NCBI GenBank assembly: GCA_977020255.1
Contig: CDROCS010003230.1
Span: 62,001 to 126,000 of the forward strand
Direction: 5' to 3'
Origin: Obrimoposthia wandeli
Taxonomy: Eukaryota
DNA length: 64,000 nt
The notes beneath the pieces are model-generated. The model had not been told where the DNA came from and did no database searches. It saw only the letters and a list, made by a program, of their open reading frames with translations. A program made the translations under genes and the position numbers. Positions 1 to 31,927 of the stretch are shown here, in pieces (position 1 is the first letter of the stretch; every line of letters starts with the position of its first letter).

Positions 1-1
1 T

Positions 2-1405: not shown

Positions 1406-1470
1406 TTCACAATTCGAAAAGTAAGTTTTTTTTTATTTTATTTTAATTTTATTTAATTTTATTTCTTTAG

Positions 1471-1910: not shown

Positions 1911-1956
1911 CTGCCCGGTAACGCGGGGCAGTCTAACTCCTGGAATGGGGTCGCAG
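1902..1956 (+). ncRNA. Unidentified 55-nt structured motif, copy 1
   Basis: GC-rich three-stem fold (CTGCGA/TCGCAG, GCTGCCC/GGGCAGT, CTC/GGG). 51 of 55 nt are identical to the copy at 6787-6841. Confidence 0.4.
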
Positions 1957-1976
1957 AATAAGTTAATTAAATCAGA

Positions 1977-6238: not shown

Positions 6239-6487
6239 AAGTATTAACTAATATCCTCTTATTTTTAATGTGATAGTATGTATCTTTTTAATGCAATAGT
6301 ATGTATATATTTTTAATGCTATAGTATGTATATATTTTTATTGATGTTTATTTTTAATACATTGTATGTATCATAACCATGTCTTGACTTCCTACTAGCT
6401 ACTCATTGGATAATTTCATTGGATAATTTTAACAAATTCTCTATAAATATAAACACATTTCAATCAACCAATTTCTCATTATTTCAA

Positions 6488-6727
6488 ATGACTACTTCTA
6501 AAGAAAAATTGCAAGCTCTCTATGATAACCTGAGCCCTACCTTGATGGCCCAGTATACTGAAAAGTACTTTAGCTTATTTGTTGCACCAGAACTTTTTGT
6601 CTCAAGGATTGAAGAACTTTATATGTATCACCTGTTTAATGGAGACTTTAAACCTAAAGTTGCAACAATCATTAAAATAGAAGAAGAAGAAAGCATGGAT
6701 TGTGACAATGAATATAATTATGTATAA
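6488..6727 (+). CDS. Small hypothetical Polinton protein (79 aa, acidic C-terminus)
   Basis: ATG at 6488 is preceded by TATAAACA at 6448, the same spacing seen for element B genes. Confidence 0.45.
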   Translation: MTTSKEKLQALYDNLSPTLMAQYTEKYFSLFVAPELFVSRIEELYMYHLFNGDFKPKVATIIKIEEEESMDCDNEYNYV

Positions 6728-6786
6728 ACATAGACTTTTTTTTACTAAACTCCTACTATAAACAATAACGTTTCTTAAGATAAAAA

Positions 6787-6841
6787 CTGCGATAGCTGTC
6801 CGGTTATGCGGGGCAGTCTAACTCCTGGAATGAGGTCGCAG
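6787..6841 (+). ncRNA. Unidentified 55-nt structured motif, copy 2
   Basis: Direct repeat of 1902-1956. TATAAACAA begins exactly 30 nt upstream (6757) and AATTAAA follows downstream. Confidence 0.4.
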
Positions 6842-6928
6842 TACTAAGTAAATTAAATAGTTGCAAATAAAAATTTGGGACGGTCAATTATGTTTAATTT
6901 CAAAATTAAAATTTTTTAATTTCAAAAT

Positions 6929-7114
6929 NNNNNNNNNNNNNNNNNNNNNNNNNNNNNNNNNNNNNNNNNNNNNNNNNNNNNNNNNNNNNNNNNNNNNNNN
7001 NNNNNNNNNNNNNNNNNNNNNNNNNNNNNNNNNNNNNNNNNNNNNNNNNNNNNNNNNNNNNNNNNNNNNNNNNNNNNNNNNNNNNNNNNNNNNNNNNNNN
7101 NNNNNNNNNNNNNN
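6929..7114. other. Assembly gap (186 N)
   Basis: Run of N. Confidence 1.
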
Positions 7115-7195
7115 TTTTTAAACTATATACAAATGTTACAAAATATTAACCTACATAATCGTAAGTGACGCATAAGTCCAAACAAATTTCGAGAC

Positions 7196-7369
7196 GTAAA
7201 GTGTCGGTTCTAAAACAATAGCACACAAAGCCCCCCCCCCCCGAACAAGGCACAAGGAACAAAGCACATCTGTATGACTAATCAAATTTCAGATGTGCTT
7301 TGTTCCTTGTGCCTTGTTCGGGGGGGGGGGGGGGCTTTGTGTGCTATTGTTTTAGAACCGACACTTTAC
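7196..7369. repeat. Near-perfect palindrome (~77-bp arms, 17-nt loop) with poly-C/poly-G tracts; probably the subterminal hairpin of element A
   Basis: GTAAAGTGTCGG...GCACATCTG pairs with CAGATGTGC...CCGACACTTTAC; C12 versus G15 run. Confidence 0.9.
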
Positions 7370-8899
7370 ACTTCTTACGGAGTCTAAATTCTTTTTTGGG
7401 CCCTTTACTTTAATTTTAACCTCTATATATATCGCACACACTTACACATGACCTTCGTGGTCCTAATATTTTTCTGCTGATTTTATTTTAATAATATTTT
7501 AATTTCATAATTACTTTTATCTTAATTATAACCTTGCTTTCAAGGATTTTTATTTTAGTATAAAAACAATTAATTATTTTAAATTACTCAAAACCTAATC
7601 CTAACAAAAGAAATAATCGTATTTTCAAAAGAAAAGCTTCACCAAAAATTGTATATAAAATGGGACAAAATATAAAATCTTTCTGATATACTCACATGCA
7701 ACATTGTAAGATAAGCTTGGTAATCTGGGAATTTTAAAAATTGAAACATATTCACAATTTAATTTTTCATATTTTCAATATATTTATCGAAAATGAGACA
7801 AATTTTTAAAATGAAAAATAACTCTAAATGAAGCAATATATTTTGATGTTTATTAAAGAATCAGAATTTACTCTATTGATTGCAACAACAAAAAAGGACG
7901 GCAGCTTATAGTATCGCTTTCTCTATCTGCGTCCACGATTCATCTTAATTTTATTAGTTGGAGAAATGAGAAATCTTGATATACCGAGCTAGTGTAAATT
8001 TGCTCTAGGTCAATTTCACTGTCAGATATTTCGGTGCATGAGATCAAATTTGGCGAATAATTTCTAGTTGACTTGGCGTGATTTTTTGAGAATTTATTTT
8101 CACTACAATTTCACGCTGCGACTTTCTCTCCATCTAACGAAATATATTACCACGTCTACTGTGAAGAGGAATTTTCTGTCACAAACAATTAAATAGGTTC
8201 ATTTTCTAAAAAAGAACAACTTCCCCGTATTCATTGCCTCATAACTGGTGAATTTATGTTTCAAATCACATTCACTTTTACGATGTACTTTTAATTTAAT
8301 ACAATATTTATTATATGTAATGCTTGATAACGAAGTAGATAATTTTGACAACGATGTACAGGTGTGAAATCATAGATCAAACTGTTATTCATGTGGCTAG
8401 TCAGATTATTAGAAAATTCTAGTTAACTGTTTTAGATAACGCCATAACAAATAAAAACATATATTTAATCCCTTTAATGAAATAGAATATTTGTAGTCTG
8501 TGGTTTAGCTTATTACGAAAATATTATTTTAAAAAATCCAACTCATCGGGATTTTGGGATATCGACATGATTAGAAAACACATTTTATACACGAAATAAC
8601 GAGTTGACAAAAATATGAAACAACATACTTAGTTATAGCAATTAATTATTAGATACGATCTGTTATGAAATCATGAAATGTCTGTATTGGTTTCTACAAA
8701 TTTCCAATTGCTAATGTGAGCCAAGTATTTTAGCTTGTAACTTAGAAAGATATCCATATTTATCTAAGTCATGTAGCAGACTCTTACTAAAGGCAATTCC
8801 TAATATTTATCCGTATTATCATTATAAATAATAATCTCTTCAGCATCTCGTTACAGGAATAATTTGTACAAATATGTACGGAGATAATATTCGTTGTGT

Positions 8900-12600: not shown

Positions 12601-12819
12601 AAATATATTTATTATTTACTGATACAGAGTGAAAAAGGTAGGCTGTGGAATTATGCTCTTTTTTGGGGGTGAAGGTTACGAATTATTTGAGTGGATATGT
12701 GTTACCATATCCACTGTCTTACCTTCTCCAATCCTTTTTCTACCAACCTTTAAATGCCCTTCAAATTTCCGTGTACATATGCTGACATTTGTGCACAGTC
12801 ATCGATATTATGGGCCCGG
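12601..12819 (+). repeat. ~220-bp interspersed repeat, copy 1 (inverted copy at 31706-31927)
   Basis: High identity to the reverse complement of 31706-31927, with the same boundaries. Internal TGGATAT/ATATCCA hairpin. Confidence 0.9.
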
Positions 12820-13420
12820 ATAATGCATTCTCTTTCCATTATACTTAAAACTTCAAATATGCAATCTTTATTGGAATTAATCAAATTTCAAAAAATTGTA
12901 TCGTCAATATTGTTTTATTTACGTTCAATAGCCTCTTTTGATTTAATTTTAGACAGGTATATGCAACTATTTGAGTAAACTTTACGCCTAATTATACCAC
13001 AGAAGCTATCTTCAAACACATATCTACCCAATCGTCTTCCAATTTCAATAACACTTACTCCAACACTCTTACATGCATATATCTTTACTAAAAACTAAAA
13101 ATCTTTTTATATCTCCTTTTTATCCAATGTTTTGCAAGTAAAATACATAAAATTAATCTTAAGTTAATGATCACAGACAAAATTAAATATTCTAAAATAA
13201 TTAAATAAAAATATGACCTTGCGAGTTCGTTGGTCGGGCTCACCAAATGGTTTAATGTTTTTAAAAATTGCTGACAAATTAGAAATGAATCATCTTGATT
13301 ACAGTAACAATTATTATTCCAATAACAGAGTTTTAATTACAGCATGTAACTGTAAGATCTGAAGACAAAGGGGATATATTTTGACTTGATTTTTATCATA
13401 AATTTTGTTGTTCAAATAAT

Positions 13421-15200: not shown

Positions 15201-15369
15201 AGTAGGTGGATGTGTCCGGTCTACTCCACACCCCCCTCCCCCCTTGTCCTTTAAAACCGTGCATGTGTGTGGAGTGAAATTTCGTGTAGGTGTGTGGATT
15301 GAAATTTCGTGTAGGTGTGTGGAGTGAAATTTCAATCCACACACATGCACGGTTTTAAAGGACAAGGGG
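15201..15369 (+). repeat. Left TIR of element B, with an internal 34-bp-arm hairpin and two 25-bp tandem units
   Basis: Reverse complement of 26761-26904 plus one extra CGTGTAGGTGTGTGGA(T/G)TGAAATTT unit (169 versus 144 bp). Confidence 0.95.
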
Positions 15370-15508
15370 GGGCGGGATCCCCCTCCCTATAAATTTTTCG
15401 GGCGGGCTTCATTCTTGATCTACAGGCACGAAAAAACATCGGTCAGATCTATATAATTTAGAGGAGCAAAAACAAAATATGAGACAAAATTATTTTTCAA
15501 AATATTTA

Positions 15509-15913
15509 TTAAACATAAAACAACATATTGGCTTCACTCAAAGTCCAAAGAGGCTGCATTTTCCCGTCATCACCAAAATATCCATTGAGACGTATTGAGA
15601 TATTCCATAGTTCTTCATCTAGAATTGGAGCAATCAAATATCCTAGATCATCTTTAAAATCCAGACTGGGATCAGTTTCAAGCTCGAAACAATTTCCTTC
15701 ATATACATAATCAGGAATGTAAAATCCCAAAATATTTTTCAATTGATCAAAATCAGATGTTGTTAAAATTTCGATGAGATATTTTTTCTCCACTTTTGAT
15801 ATTTTCACAGGATTCATAACTCGTATAATTTGATGCCTCTTTAATATATTACATAGTTTTCCTTTTGAAATTCTTTCTGGATAATAAAAATTTGCTACAC
15901 ATCTCTTATCCAT
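15509..15913 (-). CDS. Hypothetical protein, paralog 1; possible T7 gp2.5-like OB-fold ssDNA-binding protein
   Basis: 134-aa ORF conserved in copy B2. Shares NPV.I, DF..LK, F.DD.G, W...IRL.GY and P.W with its neighbour. TATAAACA lies 37 nt upstream. The SSB call is inference from the pattern. Confidence 0.75.
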   Translation of the reverse strand: MDKRCVANFYYPERISKGKLCNILKRHQIIRVMNPVKISKVEKKYLIEILTTSDFDQLKNILGFYIPDYVYEGNCFELETDPSLDFKDDLGYLIAPILDEELWNISIRLNGYFGDDGKMQPLWTLSEANMLFYV

Positions 15914-16046
15914 TCTAAAATAAGAAAACTGATTAAAAACAATGTTTATAAAAAATACATATAAGATTCATATAAGATACAAATAAAACTGATTATTAAA
16001 TGAAAGAAACACAGTAAAACCGATTACAATTTATTACACGCAAAAG

Positions 16047-16493
16047 TTAAAACATAGAAATATGAGCACGTTCAATTTTCCACATAGGCAACTTTGTTCC
16101 CATTTCATCTTTCTTGTAACCATAAAGTCGAATTGTTAGAGTCCATTGCTTCTTTTTCGGAAACGCATCAATATCAACATATCTTCCATAGTCATCTAGA
16201 AATGCTTCATCGGGTCCTCGGATATAAAATTCGTTCTTATTGAAAGTAAAATTCGGAACTGCCTTTTCTAATTTCTGTTTAAGATATTGAAAATCTGGTT
16301 TTTGAATATTTGATAGATAGTAGCTGAACTTTCTTCTTTCAATTGTCACAGGATTTACTAAAGCAATCAGTTGAGCCTTCTTCAAGAATCTGACTTTGTA
16401 TTTGAAATATTGTTTCACTTCTTCATACATATCCTTATCCGATTCTTCAAACATTTTTTTATCATCGCTTAATACCCGTTGGCTATCGTCCAT
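16047..16493 (-). CDS. Hypothetical protein, paralog 2; possible gp2.5-like SSB (start uncertain)
   Basis: Open frame to 16523 with the first ATG at 16493. Conserved in B2 (50980-51420) and clearly paralogous to 15509-15913. Confidence 0.75.
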   Translation of the reverse strand: MDDSQRVLSDDKKMFEESDKDMYEEVKQYFKYKVRFLKKAQLIALVNPVTIERRKFSYYLSNIQKPDFQYLKQKLEKAVPNFTFNKNEFYIRGPDEAFLDDYGRYVDIDAFPKKKQWTLTIRLYGYKKDEMGTKLPMWKIERAHISMF

Positions 16494-16701
16494 CGTTGAT
16501 AATTGTATTTTATATGAATGCATTTACTGTGATTTGTCCTCCAATGGCGCATTCTTTTAAACTAATTTCTAACAAAAACATGAATCTCATTGGTTACTTT
16601 AACAAAAGCATTGAATTTGATTGGACAAATTATATCATTCAATTATAATAGGTTTGCAAGATAATTACAAGAAACGTGCAATAAAAAAGCAGGTTCAGAC
16701 A

Positions 16702-16737
16702 TATATAAAGAAGATTTTATAGAATACAATTTCAGTC
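16702..16737 (+). promoter_or_regulatory. Canonical TATA plus Inr core promoter of the TBP-like gene
   Basis: TATATAAAG at 16702 and TCAGTC with its A at 16734 (32-nt spacing); ATG at 16740. Confidence 0.65.
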
Positions 16738-16739
16738 TA

Positions 16740-17216
16740 ATGAAACTCGTAAATATAAATTATAAAGGTAGAACAGAAGATGATGTTTCGTACTTACCAT
16801 TCAATGAATGGAAGCCGAGACAATATGTGGAAAGGTTTGACAATTTCACAGTTGTTATTTTTCCTACAGGTTAGTTTTTTATTTTATTTTCATATTGAAT
16901 TCTTTTAGGAAATTGTCGTGTTATGGGATGCAAAATACCAATGCTTGGGTTCAATTTACCATTTGGAATTCAAATCACTGCAATACAATCAATCACGATT
17001 TCGGCTAATCTCGGGAAACAGATAAATCTTTTTAAAACTGCAGAGAAAATGAAAGAAGAATGCATGTTTGAACCAGAAATTTTTCCTGCTCTCAGTTATT
17101 TGAAGTTTAAACCGCTATGTGTAAATATATTTTCCAGTGGTAAAGTTATGATATTGGGATTGAAAAATTTTGATTATCCAAACATTGTTGATTTGATTTT
17201 AGAAAATATATCTTAA
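16740..17216 (+). CDS. TATA-binding-protein-like protein, 145 aa, join(16740..16869,16909..17216)
   Basis: Two TBP-type repeats: KLVNI...TVVIFPTGNCRVMGCK and IQSITISANLGKQINL...FEPEIFPALSYLKFKPLCVNIFSSGKVMILGLK (compare TBP YEPELFPGLIYRM..P.IVLLIFVSGKVVLTGAK). A 39-nt GTTAGT..TTTTAG phase-1 intron joins the exons in frame. Confidence 0.85.
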
Positions 17217-17268
17217 TACATCTTGTTATCTTTTCTATAAACAAACCCGTTTAAACTTATTGTTTTGA

Positions 17269-17541
17269 ATGAATAATACTATAAATAGAGACAATGAAGT
17301 GGATCGGCTTGCCGAAGAAATATTTTCTGGAAAAATTAGGGGTAAAGAAATTTTATCAGAATTAAAAAATAATGATATAACAAGAGATAACATTGAAATA
17401 TTGGTTAGATCACACGTTATTCGAGAATTTAGAAATCGTACACAAATAAATAAAATTATAGCCAAATATTCATTAATTAATTTTTGTATTTCATCTACAA
17501 TAGCTCTAACATTGTACATTTCAATAAGGAAACTTCTATGA
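17269..17541 (+). CDS. 90-aa hypothetical protein with a hydrophobic C-terminal segment
   Basis: ATG is preceded by TATAAACAA at 17236. C-terminus SLINFCISSTIALTLYISIRKLL. Confidence 0.55.
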   Translation: MNNTINRDNEVDRLAEEIFSGKIRGKEILSELKNNDITRDNIEILVRSHVIREFRNRTQINKIIAKYSLINFCISSTIALTLYISIRKLL

Positions 17542-17578
17542 TAATATAAACAATATTAAAAATGAAAGAGTATATGCA

Positions 17579-18226
17579 ATGGAGCTAAATAATAATGCTG
17601 TATTTCAAATAGTTGGCCCTAGTGGAAGTGGAAAGACACATTTCGTCTGTAAATTGTTGCAAAATGAATCTCTTTTCAACTCGAGTTTCAAAAATATTTA
17701 TTGGCATCATGGTGGAGGAGGGGAAAGCGGGTTAACCAAAACAGAAGTTTGCAAGTTGAAGGGTATAAAATTTATTGAAGGATTTGATGCAAATTGGTGT
17801 GAAAGATTGAAAAAAGAAGATGTAATAATAATTGATGATTTGTATGAGGAGGCTAACAAGGAATCGGACTTTAATAATTTATTTACAAAGATTGCAAGAC
17901 ATCGTGAAGTAACAGTTATATTTATCACTCAAAATCTGTTTCACCAAGGAGGTCACCATAGAACAAGAAATCTTAATGTACATTACTTAGTTTTATTTAA
18001 AAATCCTAGAGATCAAACAGTTGTTGATTTTGTGGCCAGACAGGCATTTCCTCGAAATAAGCACTTTCTAGTTGATTCATTCCACGATGCTGCTAAACAA
18101 GCACATGGGTATATATTTATTGACTTTACACAAGCTTTCCCAGATGATTTACGTGTTTTAACAGACATATTTAATTCTAAGGGAGTAAATGTTTATAAAC
18201 AAATCGAGAACAATTATAAAAAATAA
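17579..18226 (+). CDS. A32/FtsK-like genome packaging ATPase
   Basis: Walker A GPSGSGKT, Walker B IIIDDL, then ARH and ITQN motifs. Intact 215 aa. Confidence 0.93.
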   Translation: MELNNNAVFQIVGPSGSGKTHFVCKLLQNESLFNSSFKNIYWHHGGGGESGLTKTEVCKLKGIKFIEGFDANWCERLKKEDVIIIDDLYEEANKESDFNNLFTKIARHREVTVIFITQNLFHQGGHHRTRNLNVHYLVLFKNPRDQTVVDFVARQAFPRNKHFLVDSFHDAAKQAHGYIFIDFTQAFPDDLRVLTDIFNSKGVNVYKQIENNYKK

Positions 18227-18233
18227 ATTCGCA

Positions 18234-18385
18234 ATGCCTTTTACAAAGTTGATAGTAAAACGTAAAGTAAAATCTAAGAAATAAAAAAAAAGAATCATTA
18301 AGAAAAAAGAAGTGAAAAAGAAGTGAAAAAATTAATCATATCTGTAGTTAAAAATAAAAAAAAACTTAATTGGCTTCGAATATAA
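18234..18385 (+). pseudogene. Small Lys-rich protein (intact 48-aa version at 51724-51870)
   Basis: MPFTKLIVKRKVKSKK* here, versus MAFKELIVKRKRKAKPKKSEKRIIEKKEVNKLIKSVVRNKRKLKWLQI in B2. Confidence 0.55.
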
Positions 18386-18416
18386 ACAATATTTAAATTG
18401 AACCTTTTTTATTAAA

Positions 18417-18529
18417 ATGAAGAAAATACAAAGAAGCATACCCTATTTTAATGCTTTGGTCAAAGCCTCTTCTAATAAGAGAATGATTATTCTTAAAGCA
18501 TTTCCATCCTTTGTTGTAGATGATTTATT
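18417..18529 (+). pseudogene. N-terminus of a conserved small basic Polinton protein, fused to the integrase by a deletion
   Basis: B2 (51897-52225) keeps the missing part, which ends LKQNGGFIGAIFPVVASIISRIIAATRK. Confidence 0.7.
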
Positions 18530-19513
18530 TCAAGTTTCAAAATTAGCAAAAAGAACAAAACAAAATTACAAGAAAACGCAGAAATGGCTGAGCGACCAGT
18601 TAGCCTACAGTCTGAACAAGCCGATGAGAAGAAGGTTTCCAACTAGAGCTTACAAAACCAGCGGTCCTAATAATTTATGGCAAATGGATTTGATGGAGAT
18701 GATCCCATATTCTTCCATTAATAAGGGATATCGATATATTTTAACATGTATTGATGTATTTAGCAGGTTTGGTCGTGCAATTCCAGTTAAAGCAAAGTCT
18801 TCAATAGCTATGCTTGAAGCCATTAAAGAAATATTAAAAGAGGACATTCCACACAATTGCAAACTGATTTAGGAAAAGAATTTTATAATAAGCAAGTTCA
18901 ATCATTATTTAAACAAAATAATATAAATCATTACTCTGTGTTTTCACAATACAAAGCAGCAGTAGTAGAAAGATTTAATCGTACTCTAAGAAATCGAATA
19001 AAAAAGTATTTCACAAAAGAAGGAAATAAAAAATTGATCCAAGTTTTACCTAAAATAATACATGCATATAATCACTCTGAACATAGAGGTCTCAAGGGAA
19101 TGAGACCTGTTGATGTTACTAATAAAATCTCTATGGACATTTGGATGAACAGGAATAAAAAAGAAAAAATTAAAAAAGCTAAATATAAGAAAAACGAATA
19201 TGTTCGAATTTCGAAAATTAGCTCTACTCCATTTATTAAAAACTTTGATCAGAATTGGAGCGATGAAATATTTTGTATAAGTAAAATTGATCAAAAGAGT
19301 AATCCAATAATGTATACTATTAAAGATGCTGACAATAATATCGTTCACGGTAAATTTTACGAGCAAGAACTACAAGTAATATCAAATAAACCTAGCGTTT
19401 TCCGTATTCAAAAAATATTAAAATCTAAGGGTACAGGTAAACATAAACAATACTTTGTTAAATGGCATGGTTATTCAGACCCAACTTGGATATCAGCATC
19501 TAATATAATATGA
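18530..19513 (+). pseudogene. int: Retroviral-like (RVE) integrase with C-terminal chromodomain; N-terminus deleted, frameshift near 18858
   Basis: WQMDL (D), QTDLGKEF (D), AVVERFNRTL (E); YFVKWHGYSDPTWI chromodomain. Confidence 0.93.
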
Positions 19514-20575
19514 AATCTATGTATATGGTTTTACCTAGTAACGGATGTCCGAAGACTCAACCAGATAATTACGCTAGTAGCTTTATTATCGATTGGGAAA
19601 ATCCTATAAATCTCCAAGGAGAATGGGAAGCGGCTTTAACAGAATTTTCATTTTATTATTCACCAATTACTATCAGAAAAAACTCACATATTTCGTTTAC
19701 AAAAGAAGTTGATCATGAAAAATCAATTGAAGTTGTGATTGGGTTTGATAGTAAAGGAAAATTCTATTACAATTGTAAAGATAAAGAATTGAAAGTAATA
19801 TATGAAAAAAAACAAAGTCATATTTAAAAATAGACTAAAACTTTTTTTAAAACCTATTCAAATTATATTTGGATCTGATAGAGAAGCTCTTCAATTTGGG
19901 TTTGACAGTGGACATGTAGTAGGTATGAAGATATCTGATATAGCCTCATCTAAAATGTTTTAAAATGTTCCTGATAGAGTAACAAAAGTGTTTTTAGTTG
20001 AAACGAGACCAAAGTATGTAGTGGAACTGAAAATGTTTTCAAAAGATTATAAATTAGATAGTGAAGTGAATTTCTGTAAATTAATACAGAAGGAATGTAG
20101 TGAATATTTTGATAAATGTGTAACATTAAAAAATGGTAAAATAACGTTTACAGTAAAGAGCAATATAATACGAGTTTTATTTGATGATAAACTTGCTAAA
20201 AACCTTGGTTTAAACAGTAATACCTTTGAAACCGATACAATAAAAACCATAAAAGCTAAAAATAAGGCAAAACTTTTAAATGCTGTTAAGCATTTATATA
20301 TGTATACTAATTTAATAGAATCAACGCTTGTAGGAGGACAGCGAGTTCCACTTTTGAGAACAATATGGATATCTAAAAATGAAACTAGAGATGGAGATAC
20401 TGTCGGTATGTGTATAGATCAACCAATGTATCTTCCAGTTTCTCTCTTTTCTATAAACAATATTGAAGTAAATATTAGAGATGATTCTGGACAACTAATA
20501 GATTTCACGTACGGGGCCAAGACAAGTTTAACAATACATTTAAGAAAACAAAATGGCGAATCCAGCAATAATTGA
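19510..20575 (+). pseudogene. Minor capsid protein (penton/PX-like), disrupted at about 19820-19990
   Basis: YMVLPSN...F...NPINLQGEWEAALTEF N-terminus and LYMYTNLIE..LVGG..VPLLR...NNIEVNIRDDSG C-terminus. Confidence 0.85.
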
Positions 20576-20929
20576 AGCTTATAGTCAAAGCCAACAAGGT
20601 GGAGAATTACCATATATTGTTGGTAAACAATACGGATCTGGCTGGCTTAGAACATTAGGTAGATTTGCCTTTCCTCTTTTAATAGACTCAGGCGATTTAT
20701 ATCAAAATTAGGAAAGGATTACCTTTCATCTAAGGACAATAAACTAATACCAACTTTTAAGAAGCATGCGCTTGATGAACTTGATAATGTTTTACATGAA
20801 GTTGCTAATTTGATTAGAAAACGTAAATCAAATAAAAGCCAAGGAGGTAGTGGATTTAAAAGTAAAAAGAAGCAAAAAATCAATATAAACAAACGTAAGA
20901 ATGTTGAAGGAACAATATTTGCAAAATGA
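20553..20929 (+). pseudogene. Basic core-like protein with QxGG/QxGxG motifs; one frameshift near 20680
   Basis: MANPAIIEAYSQSQQGGELPYIVGKQYGSGWLRTLGRFAFP...SQGGSGFKSKKKQK. The stop overlaps the MCP ATG. Confidence 0.7.
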
Positions 20930-22155
20930 GTTGCGCCAAAACTGAATTGTGTATTTTTGATAAACCACTTCCACAAGTAGTTGTAGATAATGCTTCCTTT
21001 GAAGAAATATTTCTAGTTAACTCAGTTTCAGGAACCACTTTAACCGATTTAGAATTTAATATTAATGGTTCCAATAGCGAGTATTTAGATTTGAATGATA
21101 CTTTGCTTTATGTTCAAATAAAAGTATTAAATCGGGATGGTACTAATTTAGATGAAAATGCCGATGTAACACCTGTAAATTATCTCTTTAATTCTTTATT
21201 TAATGATGCCATTGTTACTCTTAATAATGTCAAAATTGAAGGTGGAAATTCTTCCTATGCTCATAAAGCTTTGATTGAAAGTCTTTTGAATTATAGTACT
21301 GATACTCAAAATACTAATTTGACAACCATTGGTTATGATAAAACGGTCGCAACTCACAAAGAATGGATTGCAGGTTCTAAAGCTTACGAAATGTGTGGGT
21401 CTTTGAGATTGAATTTCTTTGAACAACCGAAATATTTAATTCCCGGTGTTAATGTACATCTTCGTTTGAAACGTAATAAATGGAATTTTTCTTTGATAAG
21501 CACGGACGTTCTAAAACCTAGACTTGATATTTTGGATGCAAAATTGTATGTCCGAAGAGTTAAAACCGAGCAGTCAGTTTTAATGGCACATAATATAGGA
21601 ATGGAAAAAAACAATGCTTGTTATCCTATAATAGAAACTAAACTTATATCCTATTCTTTAGGTACGGGTACACAAGCTTTTAATAAGGATCAAATTTTTA
21701 TTGATGTAAGATTACCGAAATTCATTTTAATTTCTTTTCAAAAAACTGCAAAGTTTCTAGGAAATTATACGACAGATGCAACTCAATTTGACAATCTTAA
21801 TGTAGGTTCAGTGACACTTTCAAGAAATACTGATTATCGCGAAACATATAAAACAGATTTCGAAGGTGACGCTTATGCTTTGGCTTATACGCAATCTATT
21901 ATTCGGAATTTGGGTCAACTATATAAAAATATAAACAATGGTATTTATTTCACTGACTTTAAAAGCAACTGCCCGTTCTTCACATTTGTTTTGGCACCAG
22001 ACTTTGATATAAACCAATGTCAACTACCAAAGGATGAAAATTTACGACTAGAAATTAAGTTCAATGCAGCTTTAACACATCCTACTACGGTGCTTATTTA
22101 CGGAGTATTTGATTCGGAAATACAAATCAATAAAAACAGAACTGTCATATTATAG
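20926..22155 (+). CDS. Double-jelly-roll major capsid protein (PY), intact 409 aa
   Basis: MSCAKTELCIFD N-terminus, YLDLNDTLLYV, FEQPKYLIPGV.V.L.L.RN. Lies between the core protein and the protease. Confidence 0.92.
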   Translation: MSCAKTELCIFDKPLPQVVVDNASFEEIFLVNSVSGTTLTDLEFNINGSNSEYLDLNDTLLYVQIKVLNRDGTNLDENADVTPVNYLFNSLFNDAIVTLNNVKIEGGNSSYAHKALIESLLNYSTDTQNTNLTTIGYDKTVATHKEWIAGSKAYEMCGSLRLNFFEQPKYLIPGVNVHLRLKRNKWNFSLISTDVLKPRLDILDAKLYVRRVKTEQSVLMAHNIGMEKNNACYPIIETKLISYSLGTGTQAFNKDQIFIDVRLPKFILISFQKTAKFLGNYTTDATQFDNLNVGSVTLSRNTDYRETYKTDFEGDAYALAYTQSIIRNLGQLYKNINNGIYFTDFKSNCPFFTFVLAPDFDINQCQLPKDENLRLEIKFNAALTHPTTVLIYGVFDSEIQINKNRTVIL

Positions 22156-22156
22156 A

Positions 22157-22537
22157 ATGGAGTAAGACATATTTTAAATTTATATTTATTAATTTTTATT
22201 TAGTTCAAAACAAGTAAAAGAATCAGCAGAGAAGGTCCTGGGTGATAAATTCAATGGAGTTTATCCTATTGATATGATTCCATTTTTTCAATCTGGAGGA
22301 TACATTATCAATACTCATACTTCGAATTTACCAGGAGAACATTGGATAGCTATTTATGTTAGAGAGTGGACAATACATGTATTTGATCCACTTGCAATGT
22401 ATTATCCACACAAACTTGTTTCGACTATTCACAAAGGACGAAGAAGAGTATTTTACAACAAGATGCAATATCAGGATCCTGCGACGAGAAACTGTGGACA
22501 TTTATGTATTTTATGGTTATCGTTGCAAAACGATTAG
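22157..22537 (+). CDS. Adenain-like protease, join(22157..22161,22204..22537)
   Basis: A 42-nt GTAAGA..TTTAG intron gives MDSKQVKESAEKVLGDKFNGVYP...NTH.SNLPGEHW...FDPL...QDPATRNCGHLC. Confidence 0.9.
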
Positions 22538-22799
22538 TGTGTTATAAAAATAAATATTTTTAATGTTTTATTTTGAATAATTTTTTAAATCTCTAAAAAT
22601 ATAAGGGTAAAATAATAAAAGACATAAGACAAATTTTTTTAATACATTTATTAATCACAACATCACAATGAGATATGTCAGCAAAGATAAGGTCCAACCT
22701 AAAAAAGTATTGAAATAACAAAATGTTAGAGTCAAGGTGCCATAGGGATCTAAAATTTTAAAAAACTAAACTAAAAAAATCAAATAAAATGAAAATCGT

Positions 22800-25700
22800 T
22801 TAAATTCTGAAGTGTCCATAAGCCAGGCTAGCGTTCTTTTCTACCCAAAAGCGCTTGTCGTCATTACTACTCAAAGCGATTTTGGTTGATTTATGGGAAT
22901 ACAGTTGATGGGCTCTTGAAATAAATCTAGTTTGCTCAACGCTTTCAATACACCAAGTATCATAAACTTTCCGGTAGGTCTCATGTGTAAGATTGTTTCT
23001 TCCCACACCCTTTGCTCTCATTGAACATGTATTATTAGATGTATGTAAACTGTAGCATTTAGGGCGTAGGAAAATACAATCATCATGCGAAACCTGTCCC
23101 TCGCTTTCATCCTTAAATTTCCCGATAATGTCATTTAAACTCATAGAGTGTAGAGGATTGTTAGCGGGATATTTATGGGTATCTAGTAAGTTGTCGCTGG
23201 TAATAATTGATTATTTAAACTAACATTCCTACATTCTAAAAAAAAAGAGTCAGTGTCCCCTGCCGCGATTTTGATCTCACAATTAAATTCTTGTCGGTAT
23301 TTCTCCAATTCTATGTATTGAAGCTCATACATTCTGAGTTTAGAAATGTCTAAAACCGTTTGACCTATATAACTCGGTTGATCGAGACAAATACTCTGTT
23401 TTCCTAATAACACTGCTACCAAGTCATCTGCAATTGTAAAACTACGCTTGAAGTTGTACTTGCTAGTATATGTTATTAGTTTACGCTCATCATTGCAAAA
23501 CCGTAGACAAATACGTTTCCGCAAGTCCTCTACAGTTTTTCCAAAGAGACTATTACTTTTTAACTTGTAAAAATCTCGATCGAATTTGCAAGTGGCCAAA
23601 TTACGTTTTCTTGAATTCTTCTCAATATAGTCTTTAAACACAAAGTTTTGACTGAAGCTTATAGCACGATGAATTCGAGTAACTTTCGCTCCCAACTTTA
23701 AGTAGAATTGAAGAAGCCACCAATGCACAACATAATTCAACTTGTCTTCATGGGTTAACAATAATTTCTTAACCTTTGAATTAGGTGGGCATTGATGAAC
23801 AGGCGCTACTGGAAGATCATCTAATTTATCATGCACATTGGGAGGGATTTTTATGTCCACCTCAACCAAATAGCCGAAGTCAGATGAAACTGTATCAACT
23901 GTAGCCAAATCTGTCATCAACTTATTCAACTGATCCACATCATAAACCCACTTAAAGTTGACATGAGGTAGAGGTTGAGTAAGCGCCCACCCATACAAAT
24001 TATTAATATCGATGTACAGAATCTCCGTGGATTGATTTTTGACAACATGATGTTTGTTGACAAAAGTCATTCCACCGCGTATACCATAATCATACATTTG
24101 ATACATCGCGGGATCTTGCAGTAACTCGATATTAATTTTAAGAGTTTTTATTGCTGTTGTCTATGAAAGACCAGGTAAACTAAAGAAATACATGGGATCT
24201 AGCCCATCTTCTGCTAAAGATTTTACACGAAAGAATTCAAAAACATCAGCTAAAAGATAAATGTCTAACTTCATATAATAAAGCATATATTCTAAAAGAT
24301 TTCGACAATTATTCGCCCAAAATGTACGGGCCTCATTATAGTCTTGAAGACTTACACTTTCAAATTCAGTTATGGGTGGGATTTCAGTTGTATTTTCTAA
24401 ATCTGCAAAGGTTTTCGCAAATTTATACGGAAAAATCCCCTTATCGTTAACCGAAGCTGGGAACACTGACTGTGTAATTGGCCATGCATTTAAAGATGCC
24501 GTTAAATTTTTTAAAGAACCACTCAAAAACTGCAGAGAATCTATGAATCTTAAACTGCAGAATTCAGTATATGCAGTTAAAGATAAATATATCTCTGAAG
24601 TTTGAGGTATACATGAAATCTCCCAAGAGCTTAATGTACCCAACGCGTATTTAAGTATATGATGCAAATAATATCCTTTGAGGTTATGAAACACGATGGG
24701 AATGCGTGGTTTTTTAGGGAGACGACGGCCAAAGTTACAAAGGTTGCACGCCGCTCCCAAGTATCGCCCCATAACATGATCGTGATCTCTGATTAACTTA
24801 GACTGGGTTCCACAGAAATAACATAATCTACAAGAATTAAAATTAACCCAGTCTATGCCTGTCATGATCATTGCTTGATGAGCATTGAGATCATACCACG
24901 GTTTGACAATTGTTGTTCCTAATTCCTCTAATTTTAACATAAAATCTAAAATACAATTTGGACCGGAAAATTTATGATACTGGGTAATATTGGGGCCTAA
25001 GAATAGTAGTCCTGCCGAAGCCGGTAGGTGAATACTCTCATACTGGTCGTGCAATGCTAAAATTGACTCAAAATCTGAATACACCCTAAATTCCATGGGT
25101 ATGCATTTTGCCCAATCCCTGAATTTTTAATCCTTAGGCATGCTATATAGCGTATTGTCATCAGGATTCAGTGAACATAATGTCAGATGTTTGCTGTAAG
25201 AGAGCTCGGATCGGAACCCATGCAAACATCTATGCCACCACTTATATCTTATACTAACCGGTAAGGCTCCATTATCTAAATTTAGAAGACGATCTAAATT
25301 GGGAATTGCAGCATAATGGAATTTTTTATTATGTTCGAGCAAAATTAAGTTGACCTGAGTCCCCTCATTTTTGCTCCTATAAATTACATCTACAAAAGGA
25401 TTTTTAAAATTTTCTTCATCTGTTACTTTAACTGGGATATCAGTATTATATTTGAATACATTAATACTCAAGTTATTAAGATGTTCAAATCTTGATATCG
25501 CAGTTAATTTAACAGGAAAATATATTCCATGATACTGCAATTCATTTAAAAAAGGGGTATATTTACTGACATGCTCTCTATGCTCAGTAATTACATCCCT
25601 TTTGAGGATAGCCAACACGCTATACAGAAAGCAAAGGTTATCACTGTTTTGTACGTTAACAATGGAACGTGAAAGTTGAAGAGATCTAGGTGAAGGAATG

Positions 25701-26040
25701 TATGAACTCCCCGAAAGATATATCATGTCAGTGAACTTTGTTAGAACAAAGCTAACATCGTGAATTCTAACTAGAGTCCATCCACTACTTAACTCGCTAT
25801 AATTAGCAATTTTTTCATCCAGGTTTCTTCCAATTTCAGTTACAAAATTATCATAAAAAACAGTTGCTTTATGTGAAATTACCCAAGTTTTAGTTTCCTC
25901 ATTGACATTTTTAAACTGCACTGTTGCGCAAAATTGAACCTTAGCCTGTCCTAATTTAGTCACTTCTGATTTTAAAAGATTTTCAATATTTGAATCTACA
26001 CCTACGTTTAATAAAATTTCATTTCCTAATGGCACCTTAA
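22800..26040 (-). pseudogene. polB: Protein-primed PolB of element B (several stops and frameshifts)
   Basis: VYSDFES, DHDHVMGRYLGAACNLC, FHNLKGY, YMKLDI, YIDINNLYGWA, KLKSNSLFGK, GDTDS, RPKCY, DDKR, AYGH. Confidence 0.95.
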
Positions 26041-26086
26041 CTATAACACATTTATTATTTAGGTGATACTCTATAGTAGTACCGTT

Positions 26087-26724
26087 TTATCTACGTTTTT
26101 TGGGTGGGACCTTATTAAGAAATCGGCCTCGCCTCTTTCTTCCGTTTGTCGCTGACAAACCTCCCCCTAATTGAACGGGAAGACAACTATTTATATTAAT
26201 AGTTGAGACAATTGCAGCTGATGTTGAAGGTGCTGCTATTGGTGATGCTGCCGATGTTGAGGCAATTGCAGCTGATGTGGAAGGTGCTGCCGATGTTGAG
26301 GCAATCGTAGCTGATGTTGAAGGGGCTACTGTAGCAGGTGCTGCCGATGTTGATGAGACAGTGGCAGTTGTAGAGGCTGCATTTGAAGCTGACCTTGCCG
26401 ATGAAGAAGCGGCTGTTGTAGAGGCTGCATTTGAAGCTGATCTTGCCGATGAAGAAGCGGCTGTTGTAGAGGTTAGTGCTGCTGAAATAAATATATTAAA
26501 AAATAAATATATTTTTTTAAATTACCTCTAAGGCGTGCTAACATCGATGTAGGCACTCGCGATGGTGGAGGCATATCTGTTGTAGCAGATGACGATTGTA
26601 TAACGGTATTTCCTGAATAAAAAATAAAAATAAAATATATAATTTAAAAATAATAATAAAAAATACCTAATGAAGGAAATCCAAGTTGAGCTGGAATGAA
26701 GTCCTCTTCATTGATGGAATCCAT
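26087..26724 (-). CDS. Spliced Ala/Ser/Thr-rich leader of pPolB: exons 26724-26667, 26612-26526 and 26481-26087 (179 aa, ending in an NLS-like PPKKRR)
   Basis: Two phase-1 GT..CAG introns (54 and 44 nt) keep an open frame. Contains tandem STTAASSSARSASNAA repeats and QLGGG. A possible third intron (26094-26041) joins it in frame to polB. Confidence 0.7.
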
Positions 26725-26760
26725 CCAGCTGACGTCCGGTCTAATCCACACACCCCTCCA

Positions 26761-26904
26761 CCCCTTGTCCTTTAAAACCGTGCATGTGTGTGGAGTGAAA
26801 TTTCACTCCACACACCTACACGAAATTTCACTCCACACACATGCACGGTTTTAAAGGACAAGGGGGGAGGGGGGTGTGGATTAGACTGGACACATCCACC
26901 TACT
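26761..26904 (-). repeat. Right TIR of element B
   Basis: Ends ...CACATCCACCTACT; folds into a hairpin spanning 26734-26891. Confidence 0.95.
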
Positions 26905-31705: not shown

Positions 31706-31927
31706 CCGGGCCCATAATATCGATGACTGTGCACAAATGTCAGCATATGTACACGGAAATTTGAAGGGAATTTAAAGGTTGGCAGAAAAAAGGATTGGAG
31801 AAGGTAGGACAATGGATATGGTCACACCTATATCCACTCAAATAATTCGTAACCTTCACCCCCAAAAAAGAGCATAATTCCACAGCCTACCTTTTTCACT
31901 CTGTATCAGTAAATAATAAATATATTT
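31706..31927 (-). repeat. ~220-bp interspersed repeat, copy 2 (inverted relative to 12601-12819)
   Basis: Direct sequence comparison. Confidence 0.9.

What the first reader, a model, noticed from the sequence alone, without database searches (positions are those of the whole stretch)
16702..17216. A Polinton encodes its own spliced TATA-binding-protein-like factor
Seen: removing a 39-nt intron gives a 145-aa ORF with two TBP-type repeats. Three of the four DNA-intercalating Phe positions are kept (VIFPTG, EIFPAL, NIFSSG). Repeat 1 is shortened and lacks the first Phe. The gene has a canonical TATA plus Inr promoter and is intact while neighbouring genes have decayed. Known: TBP homologs occur in large nucleocytoplasmic DNA viruses but are not part of the standard Polinton gene set (pPolB, INT, ATPase, PRO, MCP, mCP). 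Inference: this is a minimal viral TBP that redirects host Pol II to element promoters or competes with host TBP. The ORF track misses it because it is split by the intron.
Basis: partly seen in the sequence, partly recalled or inferred. Interest (0 to 1): 0.92.

Follow-up and report, generated by a model that had tools for sequence, protein, structure and literature searches.

The report
Polinton-encoded spliced mini TATA-binding protein
A virus-like Polinton element in this window carries an intron-split gene for a stripped-down TATA-binding protein that is a regular gene of this Polinton lineage, which suggests that these elements bring their own promoter-recognition factor.

Summary
Window 16740-17216 (+) is two reading-frame pieces separated by 39 nt (16870-16908) that start GT, end AG and hold two stops. 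Joined as they stand, the exons give 145 aa with no stop. Piece 2 alone passes Pfam TBP (46 bits against a cutoff of 22.9) and matches solved TBPs (E 3e-14). The protein is neither a chance match nor a host TBP fragment. An exhaustive profile search finds a family of 140-180 aa proteins (47 clusters at E<=1e-30). Members sit at the same place in syntenic Polintons from metagenomes (L005, L014, L025, L028, L035). Most relatives read straight through the junction. One (L028) has a 40-nt GT..AG stretch at the same codon and phase, so the intron is shared. A relative's AlphaFold model (pLDDT 96.7) aligns over the whole TBP saddle, but repeat 1 has lost both long helices. Three of the four intercalating Phe positions are 98-100% conserved. 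Function is inferred: an element-encoded promoter-recognition factor for host Pol II. A lineage-wide motif, TATAAACAA, lies 33-42 nt before many element genes and never before the TBP-like gene. The copy here sits in a dead element with broken PolB and integrase. A 2021 paper labelled "TBP" on related virus maps, so this is a new variant, not a new kind.

The parts
15202..26903 (.). Polinton copy A, the element that carries the gene
   Evidence: Inverted repeats 15201-15376 and 26754-26904 are 94-97% complementary. The termini read AGTAGGTGG..., and the flanks CATTTG / TATTTG give a 6-bp target duplication with 5 of 6 matching. It holds PolB, an rve integrase and an A32-type ATPase. Its gene order matches L005, L014, L025, L028 and L035.
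16702..16710 (+). TATA-like box TATATAAAG of the TBP-like gene
   Evidence: Read directly from the sequence. TATAWAW starts 38 nt before the ATG. This is a consensus match only.
16732..16738 (+). Inr-like TCAGTCT, with its A 30 nt after the T of TATAAA
   Evidence: Read directly from the sequence. The transcription start is not known.
16740..16869 (+). Exon 1 of the TBP-like gene (43 codons plus 1 base)
   Evidence: It matches the N-termini of family members at 35-61% identity and HMM positions 1-45.
16870..16908 (+). 39-nt phase-1 intron (GTTAGT...TTTTAG; 64% T, 15% G+C)
   Evidence: The stretch is absent from all uninterrupted relatives. A 40-nt GT..AG stretch lies at the same codon and phase in L028.
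16909..17216 (+). Exon 2 of the TBP-like gene (end of repeat 1, all of repeat 2, stop codon)
   Evidence: Pfam TBP at 46.4 bits. PDB hits are TBPs at E 3e-14. It matches HMM positions 46-148.
17236..17244 (+). TATAAACAA promoter-type motif, 33 nt before the orf90 ATG
17545..17553 (+). TATAAACAA motif, 34 nt before the ATPase ATG
18381..18389 (+). TATAAACAA motif, 36 nt before the ATG at 18417
20884..20892 (+). TATAAACAA motif, 42 nt before the ATG of the 409-aa ORF
   Evidence: The same motif lies at the same spot in L005, L014 and L025.
16047..16523 (-). orf158, divergently oriented neighbour of unknown function
   Evidence: 27% identical to L014 orf116, which also sits next to the TBP-like gene. 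It is a paralogue of orf134 at 15509-15913.
17269..17541 (+). orf90, a small ORF after the TBP-like gene
   Evidence: A small ORF occupies the same position in L005, L006 and L035.
17579..18226 (+). Packaging ATPase (A32-like), unbroken
   Evidence: Pfam Pox_A32 at 2e-6. It is 73% identical to the L014 ATPase, with no stop or frame change.
18417..19513 (+). Integrase region (rve plus chromodomain), broken: 1 stop and 1 frame change
19510..20575 (+). Homologue of the 340-aa ORF of L014 (penton position), broken: 1 frame change
20926..22155 (+). 409-aa ORF at the major-capsid position, unbroken; no family label obtained
   Evidence: 58% identical to the L014 408-aa ORF. No Pfam or PHROG hit.
22274..22537 (+). 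Adenain-like protease remnant (87 aa; relatives have 151-154 aa)
   Evidence: Pfam Peptidase_C5 is weak at E 0.015. The L002 homologue scores 3e-6.
22800..26110 (-). Protein-primed type B DNA polymerase, broken: 4 stops and 1 frame change
   Evidence: Pfam DNA_pol_B_2 at 1.6e-16 and 1.2e-9.

Best explanation
The locus is a gene of an integrated Polinton (copy A, 15202-26903). It encodes a 145-aa 'mini-TBP', made by removing a 39-nt phase-1 intron. The protein keeps the ten-stranded DNA-binding saddle of TBP: repeat 2 is complete, while repeat 1 is reduced to its beta-strands and lacks both long helices. It also keeps three of the four intercalating Phe positions and the E-P-E-[LI]-F-P stirrup of repeat 2. 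In active members of this lineage it most likely works as an element-encoded promoter-recognition factor. It would sit on an A/T-rich box about 30 nt upstream of the start site and nucleate a host RNA polymerase II initiation complex through the stirrup that faces TFIIB in cellular TBP. Lacking the convex-side helices of repeat 1, it may be blind to host factors that dock there. Its probable targets are the element's own TATAAACAA-type promoters, which precede the ATPase, capsid-position and neighbouring genes. The factor's own gene uses a different promoter, often a canonical TATA box. This would give a two-step programme like the late-gene TBP mimics of beta- and gamma-herpesviruses. What is shown: the gene model, family membership, fold, Polinton context and the promoter dichotomy. 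What is inferred: DNA binding, the link to TFIIB and Pol II, and which promoters it serves. The copy in this window lies in a dead element, so its present activity is doubtful.
For: Gene model:
- The junction is bridged without a gap by uninterrupted relatives.
- The spliced product fits the family HMM end to end at 180.9 bits.
- L028 has a 40-nt GT..AG stretch at the same codon and phase. Its length is not a multiple of 3, so only splicing gives the 148-aa protein.
- Short T-rich GT..AG stretches are enriched in the window (12 against 3.5+-2.2 in shuffles) and lie in sense in Polinton genes.

Family and fold:
- Pfam TBP scores 46 bits.
- A family profile against PDB returns 35 sequences, all TBP or TBP fusions, with E down to 4e-18.
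- The AlphaFold model of relative P0003 has pLDDT 96.7 and pTM 0.87.
- In Foldseek against PDB the top 44 hits are all TBP chains or TBP fusion constructs, at E about 3e-9, TM 0.6-0.73 and 158-184 aligned columns.
- In Foldseek against viral models the top hits are giant-virus TBPs, with weaker hits to herpesvirus BcRF1-type proteins.

Conservation:
- F41, F104 and F120 are 98-100% conserved; E100 is 92%, E102 100%, [LI]103 99% and P105 92%.
- The window protein keeps every near-invariant residue.

Lineage gene:
- The exhaustive search gives 47 clusters at E<=1e-30 and 381 at E<=1e-10.
- 27 metagenome loci were recovered.
- The gene holds the same position in L005, L014, L025, L028 and L035, next to the ATPase, rve integrase, capsid-position ORF and PolB.

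Promoters:
- TATAAACAA occurs 15 times against 4.1 expected; 0 of 100 shuffles reach 15.
- It lies 33-42 nt before ATGs in the window and in L005, L014, L025, L028 and L023.
- It is absent from all 27 distinct upstream regions of TBP-like genes, 12 of which have TATAWAW instead.

Analogy: herpesviral TBP mimics that read TATT late promoters (PMC4922670, PMC6541308, PMC12529657).
Against: - No expression, binding or start-site data exist here.
- Repeat 1 is invisible to sequence libraries and is recognised only by fold. The internal repeat is weak by hhalign (P 0.0026, low confidence).
- The structure was predicted for a relative that is 56% identical, not for the window protein.
- A saddle missing one Phe and both repeat-1 helices might bind DNA differently or not at all.
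- The TATAAACAA motif could simply be a host-TBP TATA variant.
- Some related loci lack the motif (L009 has none).
- In copy B the motif also precedes the PolB-strand gene, so an early/late split is not clean.
- Only 1 of about 35 related loci shares the intron, and it is not the closest relative (50% against 56% identity). Independent gain at a ..CAG|G site cannot be excluded.
- The element here is dead: PolB has 4 stops and 1 frame change, and the integrase has 1 stop and 1 frame change.
- The TFIIB-contact role of the E-P-E-L stirrup is taken from my own knowledge of the TBP literature and was not checked here.
Confidence: 0.55

Rival explanations
1. Fossil only. The gene was a working Polinton TBP homologue, but this copy is an inert remnant whose open frame survives by chance. 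Nothing is made from it today.
For: The element's PolB, integrase and penton-position genes carry 8 breaks in about 5.4 kb. At that density, a 0.44-kb gene stays unbroken with probability of about 0.5. Sister copy C (87-98% identical) has lost the whole stretch that holds this gene. The exact 97-aa ORF is not on record in any public assembly.
Against: All 18 near-invariant family residues are kept. The intron signals, the promoter box and the ATG are intact. This rival concerns present activity only and is compatible with the best explanation for the family.
Confidence: 0.5
2. Decoy or competitor. The mini-TBP occupies TATA boxes, or titrates TFIIB, without building a productive complex. This would damp host transcription, or the element's own, rather than activate it.
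For: It lacks both helices of repeat 1. In cellular TBP these form part of the convex surface used by partner factors (established knowledge, not tested here). The region corresponding to the N-terminal stirrup is the most variable part of the family (positions 22-31). One Phe position is not kept.
Against: A pure decoy would not need a promoter class of its own that differs from those of the other element genes. The TFIIB-facing stirrup is almost invariant, which fits productive recruitment at least as well as titration.
Confidence: 0.15
3. Architectural DNA bender. The saddle is used for replication, integration or packaging (for example at the terminal repeats), not for transcription.
For: The TBP fold bends DNA sharply. 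The gene sits beside the packaging ATPase and integrase in all syntenic loci. The function of the partner ORFs (orf158, orf90) is unknown.
Against: The residues that are most conserved are those of the TFIIB-facing stirrup and the Phe pairs. A positional promoter motif exists in the same elements. The TIRs here are G/C-rich at their ends, a poor match for a TATA-type binder.
Confidence: 0.1
4. Not an intron. The 39 nt are a disabling insertion, and the resemblance to a splice unit is chance.
For: The stretch is in frame and carries 2 stops. Most relatives lack it. Exons of the host G-beta gene in the window lie more than 10 kb apart, so no short host intron is documented here.
Against: - The boundaries CAG|GTTAGT and TTTTAG|G are exact. 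Removing the stretch restores the family alignment with no gap.
- L028 has a 40-nt stretch at the same codon and phase.
- Four more 42-54-nt T-rich GT..AG stretches lie in sense in Polinton genes of copies A and B.
- The pattern is about 3.4-fold enriched over shuffles.
Confidence: 0.07
5. Recently captured piece of the host's own TBP or TBP-related factor gene.
For: Polintons do pick up host genes. Starrett et al. describe TBP among 'homologs of host proteins' in their preprint legend.
Against: - Identity to cellular TBPs is only 19-25% in structural alignments.
- The closest sequences are 45-56% identical proteins that sit in syntenic Polintons.
- The shortened architecture is shared by about 100 clusters.
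- No second TBP-like sequence exists in the window.
Confidence: 0.02

Closest known systems
Cellular TATA-binding protein (archaeal and eukaryotic TBP, Pfam PF00352)
   Same: Repeat 2 matches at sequence level: E 3e-14 to Sulfolobus TBP 1mp9 and about 1e-8 to human and yeast TBP. The whole saddle matches at fold level. The E-P-E-[LI]-F-P and [NL]-[IV]-F-S-[ST]-G-K motifs line up with both TBP repeats.
   Different: The protein is 145-160 aa instead of a core of about 180 aa. Repeat 1 has no H2 helix and only a 3-residue turn for H1. The first Phe position is not conserved. The residue aligned with the central Asn of repeat 2 is Ser in 94% of members. The gene is encoded by a mobile element.
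TBP-like proteins of giant viruses (Nucleocytoviricota), e.g. the putative TBP of Heterosigma akashiwo virus 01 and asfarvirus B263R homologues
   Same: These are virus-encoded TBP-fold proteins and the best viral fold hits (E 2e-8 to 3e-5).
   Different: They are 190-550 aa and work with a virus-encoded RNA polymerase (established knowledge). The Polinton encodes no RNA polymerase among the ORFs I scanned. Sequence identity is 12-20%.
Herpesviral TBP mimics of the late-gene pre-initiation complex (EBV BcRF1, KSHV ORF24, HCMV UL87)
   Same: The closest functional analogy. A nuclear DNA virus without its own polymerase encodes a TBP-fold factor that reads a non-canonical box (TATT) on late promoters and brings in host Pol II (PMC4922670, PMC6541308, PMC12529657). 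A weak fold hit to a macacine gammaherpesvirus BcRF1 was found (E 3e-3).
   Different: No sequence relationship was found. The herpes proteins are about 400-1000 aa and need five viral partners. Here the protein is tiny, and no partners have been identified.
'TBP' gene label on maps of MELD viruses / polinton-like elements (Starrett et al. 2021, PMC8502044, Fig. 5 legend)
   Same: A TBP-like gene in mid-size dsDNA elements with Polinton-type PolB and integrase. The same legends also list a TRAF label, and L035 has MATH/TRAF genes beside the element.
   Different: It is only a map label. The text I could read gives no description of architecture, intron, family size or promoters. I could not see the figure, so identity with this family is unproven.
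TBP-related factors of animals (TRF2/TLF)
   Same: Divergent TBP paralogues used for alternative promoter classes (established knowledge, not tested here).
   Different: They are host genes of full core length. Nothing in the searches placed the mini-TBP with them.

Membership tests
TBP family (Pfam PF00352) | Significant match to the TBP repeat profile above the curated cutoff | tested here: met
   Exon 2 alone scores 46.4 bits against a cutoff of 22.9, E 3.5e-12. Six of 7 rows of alignment A1 match. L014's 148-aa ORF scores 63 bits.
TBP family (Pfam PF00352) | Two tandem repeats forming one saddle | tested here: met
   The AlphaFold model of relative P0003 (pLDDT 96.7) aligns over 158-184 columns of TBP cores at TM 0.6-0.73. 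Repeat 1 is not detected by sequence profiles. hhalign of the two halves is weak (P 0.0026). The window protein itself was not folded.
TBP family (Pfam PF00352) | Each repeat carries two alpha-helices on the convex side | tested here: not met
   The model has only two helices of 4 or more residues (86-96 and 136-154), both in repeat 2. Repeat 1 has one 3-residue turn.
TBP family (Pfam PF00352) | Two pairs of intercalating Phe | tested here: not met
   Three are conserved: F41 100%, F104 98%, F120 100%. No column between positions 24 and 31 has a Phe majority. The window has Tyr at position 29 and Lys at position 25.
TBP family (Pfam PF00352) | C-terminal stirrup motif E-P-E-[LQ]-F-P | tested here: met
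   E100 is 92%, P101 85%, E102 100%, [LI]103 99%, F104 98% and P105 92% conserved. The window reads E-P-E-I-F-P. It aligns with the same motif of solved TBPs.
TBP family (Pfam PF00352) | Binds and bends TATA-type DNA and nucleates a pre-initiation complex | not testable with these tools
   No binding or expression data are available.
Polinton / Maverick element | Protein-primed type B DNA polymerase | tested here: met
   Pfam DNA_pol_B_2 at 1.6e-16 and 1.2e-9. The gene is broken by 4 stops and 1 frame change.
Polinton / Maverick element | Retroviral-type (rve) integrase | tested here: met
   rve scores E 2e-6 but only 28.4 bits, below Pfam's 32.6-bit cutoff, on the broken window ORF. The Chromo domain scores 1.3e-5. 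L014's intact integrase scores rve at 1.2e-12. The window gene is broken by 1 stop and 1 frame change.
Polinton / Maverick element | A32/FtsK-type packaging ATPase | tested here: met
   Pox_A32 at 2e-6, above the cutoff.
Polinton / Maverick element | Adenain-like cysteine protease | tested here: inconclusive
   The window ORF 22274-22537 scores Peptidase_C5 at E 0.015, below the cutoff. The related locus L002 scores 3.2e-6.
Polinton / Maverick element | Major and minor jelly-roll capsid proteins | tested here: inconclusive
   The ORFs at the expected positions are conserved among relatives (58% and 41% identity to L014) but get no Pfam or PHROG label. No fold was predicted.
Polinton / Maverick element | Terminal inverted repeats and a 6-bp target-site duplication | tested here: met
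   The TIRs are about 150-175 nt and 94-97% complementary. The flanks CATTTG / TATTTG match at 5 of 6 positions.
Spliceosomal intron | GT..AG boundaries with flanking consensus; removal restores the reading frame and the homology | tested here: met
   The boundaries are CAG|GTTAGT...TTTTAG|G. There is no gap at the junction against the family HMM.
Spliceosomal intron | Position shared by a relative | tested here: met
   L028 has a 40-nt GT..AG stretch at the same codon and the same phase. The other 30-odd loci lack an intron.
Spliceosomal intron | Spliced RNA observed | not testable with these tools
   No transcript data are at hand.
Herpesviral vPIC TBP mimic | Homology to BcRF1 / ORF24 / UL87 | tested here: not met
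   Only weak fold hits were found (E 3e-3 and worse, TM 0.37). No sequence hit appeared in any search. The likeness is functional analogy only.

The most novel reading that the evidence does not exclude
This Polinton lineage runs a two-tier transcription programme of its own. A helix-stripped mini-TBP, expressed from a host-type TATA promoter, is the specificity factor for a dedicated ATAAACA promoter class on the packaging and capsid genes. It recruits host Pol II through TFIIB while escaping host regulators that need the repeat-1 helices. That would be the smallest known TBP, and the first virus-encoded promoter-recognition factor described for Polintons, convergent with the herpesvirus late-gene complex.
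Probability: 0.3. Interest if true: 0.8.

Novelty: new variant of a known kind. Interest (0 to 1): 0.62.

Why it matters
Polintons are usually described as relying wholly on host transcription, and their gene expression is almost unstudied.

A conserved, element-encoded TBP homologue makes the question 'how does a Polinton time its genes?' directly testable with expression data. So does a positional promoter motif that marks the packaging and capsid genes but never the factor's own gene.

The protein is also a natural minimal TBP. It shows which parts of the saddle can be discarded (both helices of repeat 1 and one Phe) while the beta-sheet and the TFIIB-facing stirrup stay nearly invariant.

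For genome annotation, the gene is missed by ORF-based tracks because of the intron. In metagenomes it is auto-labelled as an ordinary cellular TBP.

Tried and rejected
- Exon 1 alone against Pfam and PDB gave nothing.
- The bacterial promoter/terminator scan was not informative for a eukaryotic element.
- Rfam on the whole window gave no hit.
- PHROGs on the neighbouring ORFs gave nothing useful.
- About a dozen relatives start at the Met just after the junction, and I tested whether they share the intron. They do not. L006 and L004 have an open upstream frame, L007 has a frameshift, and L005 has an open frame without an ATG. Those short calls are gene-calling artefacts.
- The junctions between the PolB and integrase ORF pieces do not look like introns. 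I treated them as breaks and did not join them.
- Exact look-up of the window's 97-aa ORF in public assemblies found nothing on record.
- The IMG/VR viral contig scan found no relative.
A narrower alignment worked.
- Cluster look-up of ten family members returned only metagenome sources and no named organism.
- hhalign of the two halves of the protein gave weak support only, and its register is uncertain.
- I did not fold the window's own spliced protein. It has no reference and would have had to be typed, so the closest uninterrupted relative (P0003) was folded instead.
- Phylogenetic placement relative to archaeal or eukaryotic TBP was not attempted. The scores differ too little for a short, fast-evolving protein.
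Full report

The second was a stretch of a mammalian G-beta protein. None of these letters went to a tool, and no conclusion rests on them. Every TBP motif comparison below comes from tool alignments. I noted the G-beta slip in the notebook, not the TBP-motif one.

**1. The observation**

The + strand at 16740-17216 holds two open pieces in the same frame.
- Piece 1 is 44 codons, from the ATG at 16740, ending ..VVIFPTG.
- Piece 2 starts NCRVMGCK.. and runs to the stop at 17214-17216.
- The 39 nt between them (16870-16908) begin GTTAGT, end TTTTAG and contain two stops. They are 64% T and 15% G+C.
- Joining the exons as they stand gives 145 aa with no stop.
- Only one such gene exists in the window.

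**2. Is the 39-nt stretch an intron?**

I first searched the pieces apart. Piece 2 retrieved five metagenome proteins of 119-157 aa that are 53-54% identical.
- All five are uninterrupted ORFs. The N-termini of four match piece 1 and read straight across the junction. The fifth call, P0004, starts after piece 1, but its contig L004 has the piece-1-like frame open upstream.
- A family HMM built without the window rows aligns the spliced product in one domain (180.9 bits, HMM 1-148) with no gap or insert around the junction.

About a dozen family members begin at the Met just after the junction, so I checked whether they hide the same intron. They do not, and the short calls are gene-calling artefacts.

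The metagenome scan then produced L028.
- It has a 40-nt stretch, GTATAA...GTCTTAG.
- The stretch sits after the same ..ACAG, inside the same Gly codon, in the same phase.
- Because 40 is not a multiple of three, only splicing yields its 148-aa protein.
- The intron position is therefore shared by a relative.

A pattern scan for short T-rich GT..AG units finds 12 hits in the window against 3.5+-2.2 in shuffles.
- Besides the TBP gene, four lie in sense within Polinton genes. Two are in copy A upstream of PolB (54 and 44 nt) and two in copy B (50 and 42 nt).
- By contrast, the joints between the PolB and integrase ORF pieces do not look like introns. I treated them as breaks.

One caveat applies. 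L028's protein is no closer to the window's (50%) than intron-less relatives are (up to 56%). The alternatives are an old intron lost many times, or two gains at a ..CAG|G site.

**3. What the protein is**

Sequence evidence:
- Piece 2 alone passes Pfam TBP at 46.4 bits against a cutoff of 22.9.
- Against solved structures it hits only TBPs or TBP fusions. The best are Sulfolobus 1mp9 (3.4e-14), Methanocaldococcus 2z8u and Pyrococcus. Human, yeast and plant TBPs score around 1e-8.
- A family profile raises this to 4e-18. Its C-terminal repeat aligns with both repeats of each TBP chain, but its N-terminal 58 positions find nothing.

Fold evidence:
- A 53-row alignment (A2) gave an AlphaFold model of the closest uninterrupted relative, P0003, with pLDDT 96.7 and pTM 0.87.
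- In Foldseek against the PDB, the top 44 hits are all TBP chains or TBP fusion constructs, at E about 3e-9, TM 0.6-0.73 and 158-184 aligned columns. The alignment therefore covers the whole two-repeat saddle.
- Against viral models the best hits are giant-virus TBPs, with weak hits to herpesvirus BcRF1-type proteins.

Architecture:
- The model's secondary structure shows strands for both halves.
- It has only two real helices, and both are in repeat 2.
- Repeat 1 has lost H2 and keeps a 3-residue vestige of H1.

Conservation:
- Column shares are F41 100%, F104 98% and F120 100%.
- No Phe majority exists anywhere in positions 24-31, where the first Phe would lie.
- The repeat-2 stirrup E-P-E-[LI]-F-P is 85-100% conserved.
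- The residue aligned with the central Asn of repeat 2 is Ser in 94% of members.
- The window protein keeps all 18 near-invariant residues.

**4. The gene belongs to the element**

Copy A (15202-26903) has the features of a Polinton.
- Its terminal inverted repeats are 94-97% complementary.
- Its ends read AG.., and it has a 5-of-6 six-bp target duplication.
- It carries a protein-primed PolB, an rve integrase with chromodomain and an A32-type ATPase.
- It has a weak adenain-like protease.
- It has conserved ORFs at the capsid positions.

The exhaustive profile search shows a real family.
- There are 2406 hits at E<=1e-3, 381 at <=1e-10 and 47 at <=1e-30.
- About 100 clusters of 140-180 aa match full length in one stretch.
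- Where context is available, the gene lies at the same place. The order is small ORF(s), mini-TBP, small ORF, ATPase, integrase, penton-position ORF, capsid-position ORF, protease-side ORFs, and PolB on the other strand. This holds in L005, L014, L025, L028 and L035, and next to an adenain-like protease in L002.
- L014 and L025 have these genes unbroken.

This excludes a recent host TBP fragment. All family members traced so far come from metagenomes, and JGI's pipeline labels them as ordinary TBP. IMG/VR holds none.

**5. State of this copy**

Measured against L014's proteins:

| Gene | State |
|---|---|
| PolB | 4 stops and 1 frame change |
| Integrase region | 1 stop and 1 frame change |
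| Penton-position gene | 1 frame change |
| ATPase | unbroken, 73% identity |
| 409-aa capsid-position ORF | unbroken, 58% identity |
| Mini-TBP | unbroken |

With 8 breaks in about 5.4 kb, a 0.44-kb gene escapes by chance about half the time. Intactness here is therefore no sign of selection or domestication. Copy C elsewhere in the window is 87-98% identical to A. It lacks the stretch 16486-17938, so it has lost this gene.

**6. Promoters**

- TATAAACAA occurs 15 times in the window against 4.1 expected, and 0 of 100 shuffles reach 15.
- In copy A it lies 33-42 nt before the ATGs of orf134 (TATAAACAT there), orf90, the ATPase, the integrase-region ORF and the capsid-position ORF.
- The same box, at the same distance, precedes the corresponding genes in L005, L014, L025, L028 and L023. 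These elements are only about 50% identical in protein.
- It is absent from all 27 distinct upstream regions of mini-TBP genes. Twelve of those have TATAWAW instead, including the window's TATATAAAG. One sub-group has another shared pattern.
- There are exceptions. L009 lacks the box altogether. In copy B the box precedes the PolB-strand gene.

**7. Mechanism**

The following is shown:
- a TBP-fold, TBP-family protein;
- the DNA-face Phe residues and the repeat-2 stirrup are preserved;
- the gene is encoded by a nuclear element that, among the ORFs scanned, has no RNA polymerase;
- the element has a positional A/T-rich promoter box on many genes and a different promoter on the factor's own gene.

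The following is inferred:
- The protein binds an A/T box and nucleates host Pol II initiation through TFIIB. The stirrup's role is from my knowledge of the TBP literature and was not checked here.
- It may be insensitive to host factors that use the repeat-1 helices.
- It may serve the ATAAACA class.

The best analogy is the beta/gamma-herpesvirus TBP mimic that reads TATT late promoters (PMC4922670, PMC6541308, PMC12529657). It is an analogy, not homology. The rivals are a fossil copy, a decoy, an architectural bender, a non-intron insertion and host capture. Each is weighed in its own section of this report.

**8. Novelty**

- Virus-encoded TBP homologues are known in giant viruses and herpesviruses.
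- For Polinton-type elements, the only mention I found is a 'TBP' map label in Starrett et al. 2021.
- Other searches for Polinton or Maverick with TBP, TATA or TFIID found nothing relevant.
- The helix-stripped architecture, the size and synteny of the family, the shared intron and the promoter dichotomy appear undescribed in the literature I could search.
- I rate it a new variant of a known kind, of solid interest to people working on Polintons and on minimal transcription machinery.

Noticed in passing
window 1-7370 and 50359-61731: Two further Polinton remnants are present. Copy B is cut by the window start, with a capsid-position C-terminus at 2-615 and PolB at 2944-6229. Copy C is 87-98% identical to copy A but lacks the stretch that holds the TBP-like gene, orf90 and the N-terminal half of the ATPase. 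It has a TIR-like end at 59004-59103.
   Followed up: partly
window 17236, 17545, 18194, 18381, 20452, 20884, 21930 (+); also 400, 1370, 6757, 51684, 51866 (+), 36135, 62110 and 62145 (-); loci L005, L014, L025, L028, L023: A lineage-wide positional promoter-type motif, [AT]ATAAACA[AT], lies 33-42 nt before many element ATGs. It never precedes the TBP-like gene.
   Followed up: yes
window 26088-26723 (-), with 26613-26666 and 26482-26525; window 1421-1470 and 1581-1622 (+): Short T-rich GT..AG stretches of 42-54 nt lie in sense at the 5' side of the PolB-strand genes of copies A and B. In copy A they sit in a Ser/Ala/Thr-rich repetitive ORF with a basic tail. In copy B the first looks like a 5'UTR intron just after a TATAAACAA box.
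   Followed up: partly
window 12601-12824 and 31701-31927: An outer inverted repeat, 96-100% complementary and 19 kb apart, brackets Polinton copy A. It may be a second element into which A inserted, or a larger composite.
   Followed up: no
window 48523-49119 (-) and 33312-33686 (-): Two exons of a host G-protein beta (WD40) gene lie more than 10 kb apart. The exons are much more G+C-rich than the surrounding 30% G+C DNA. The middle of the gene was not located, and the host could not be named.
   Followed up: partly
window 56998-57690 (+): A Ty3/gypsy-type fragment (RNase H and integrase zinc-binding domain) lies inside the span of Polinton copy C.
   Followed up: no
window 7196-7369 and 6929-7114: Perfect nested palindromes with C12/G12 runs lie at the right edge of copy B, next to a run of 186 N. 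I left the N run as it is.
   Followed up: no
window 15509-15913 (-) and 16047-16523 (-); 50980-51456 (-); L014 1788-2138: orf134 and orf158 look like tandem paralogues of unknown function (similar C-terminal stretches by eye). orf158 and a 158-aa ORF at 50980-51456 in copy C are distantly similar to the ORF beside the mini-TBP gene in L014 (27% and 25% identity).
   Followed up: partly
L035 854-6447: Two MATH/TRAF-domain genes lie beside a mini-TBP-bearing Polinton in a 16.2-kb metagenome contig. Starrett et al. list TRAF and TBP labels together on MELD virus maps.
   Followed up: no
L007 119-580: One metagenome relative has a frame change inside the mini-TBP gene at a run of A. It could be a sequencing error or a decayed copy.
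   Followed up: no
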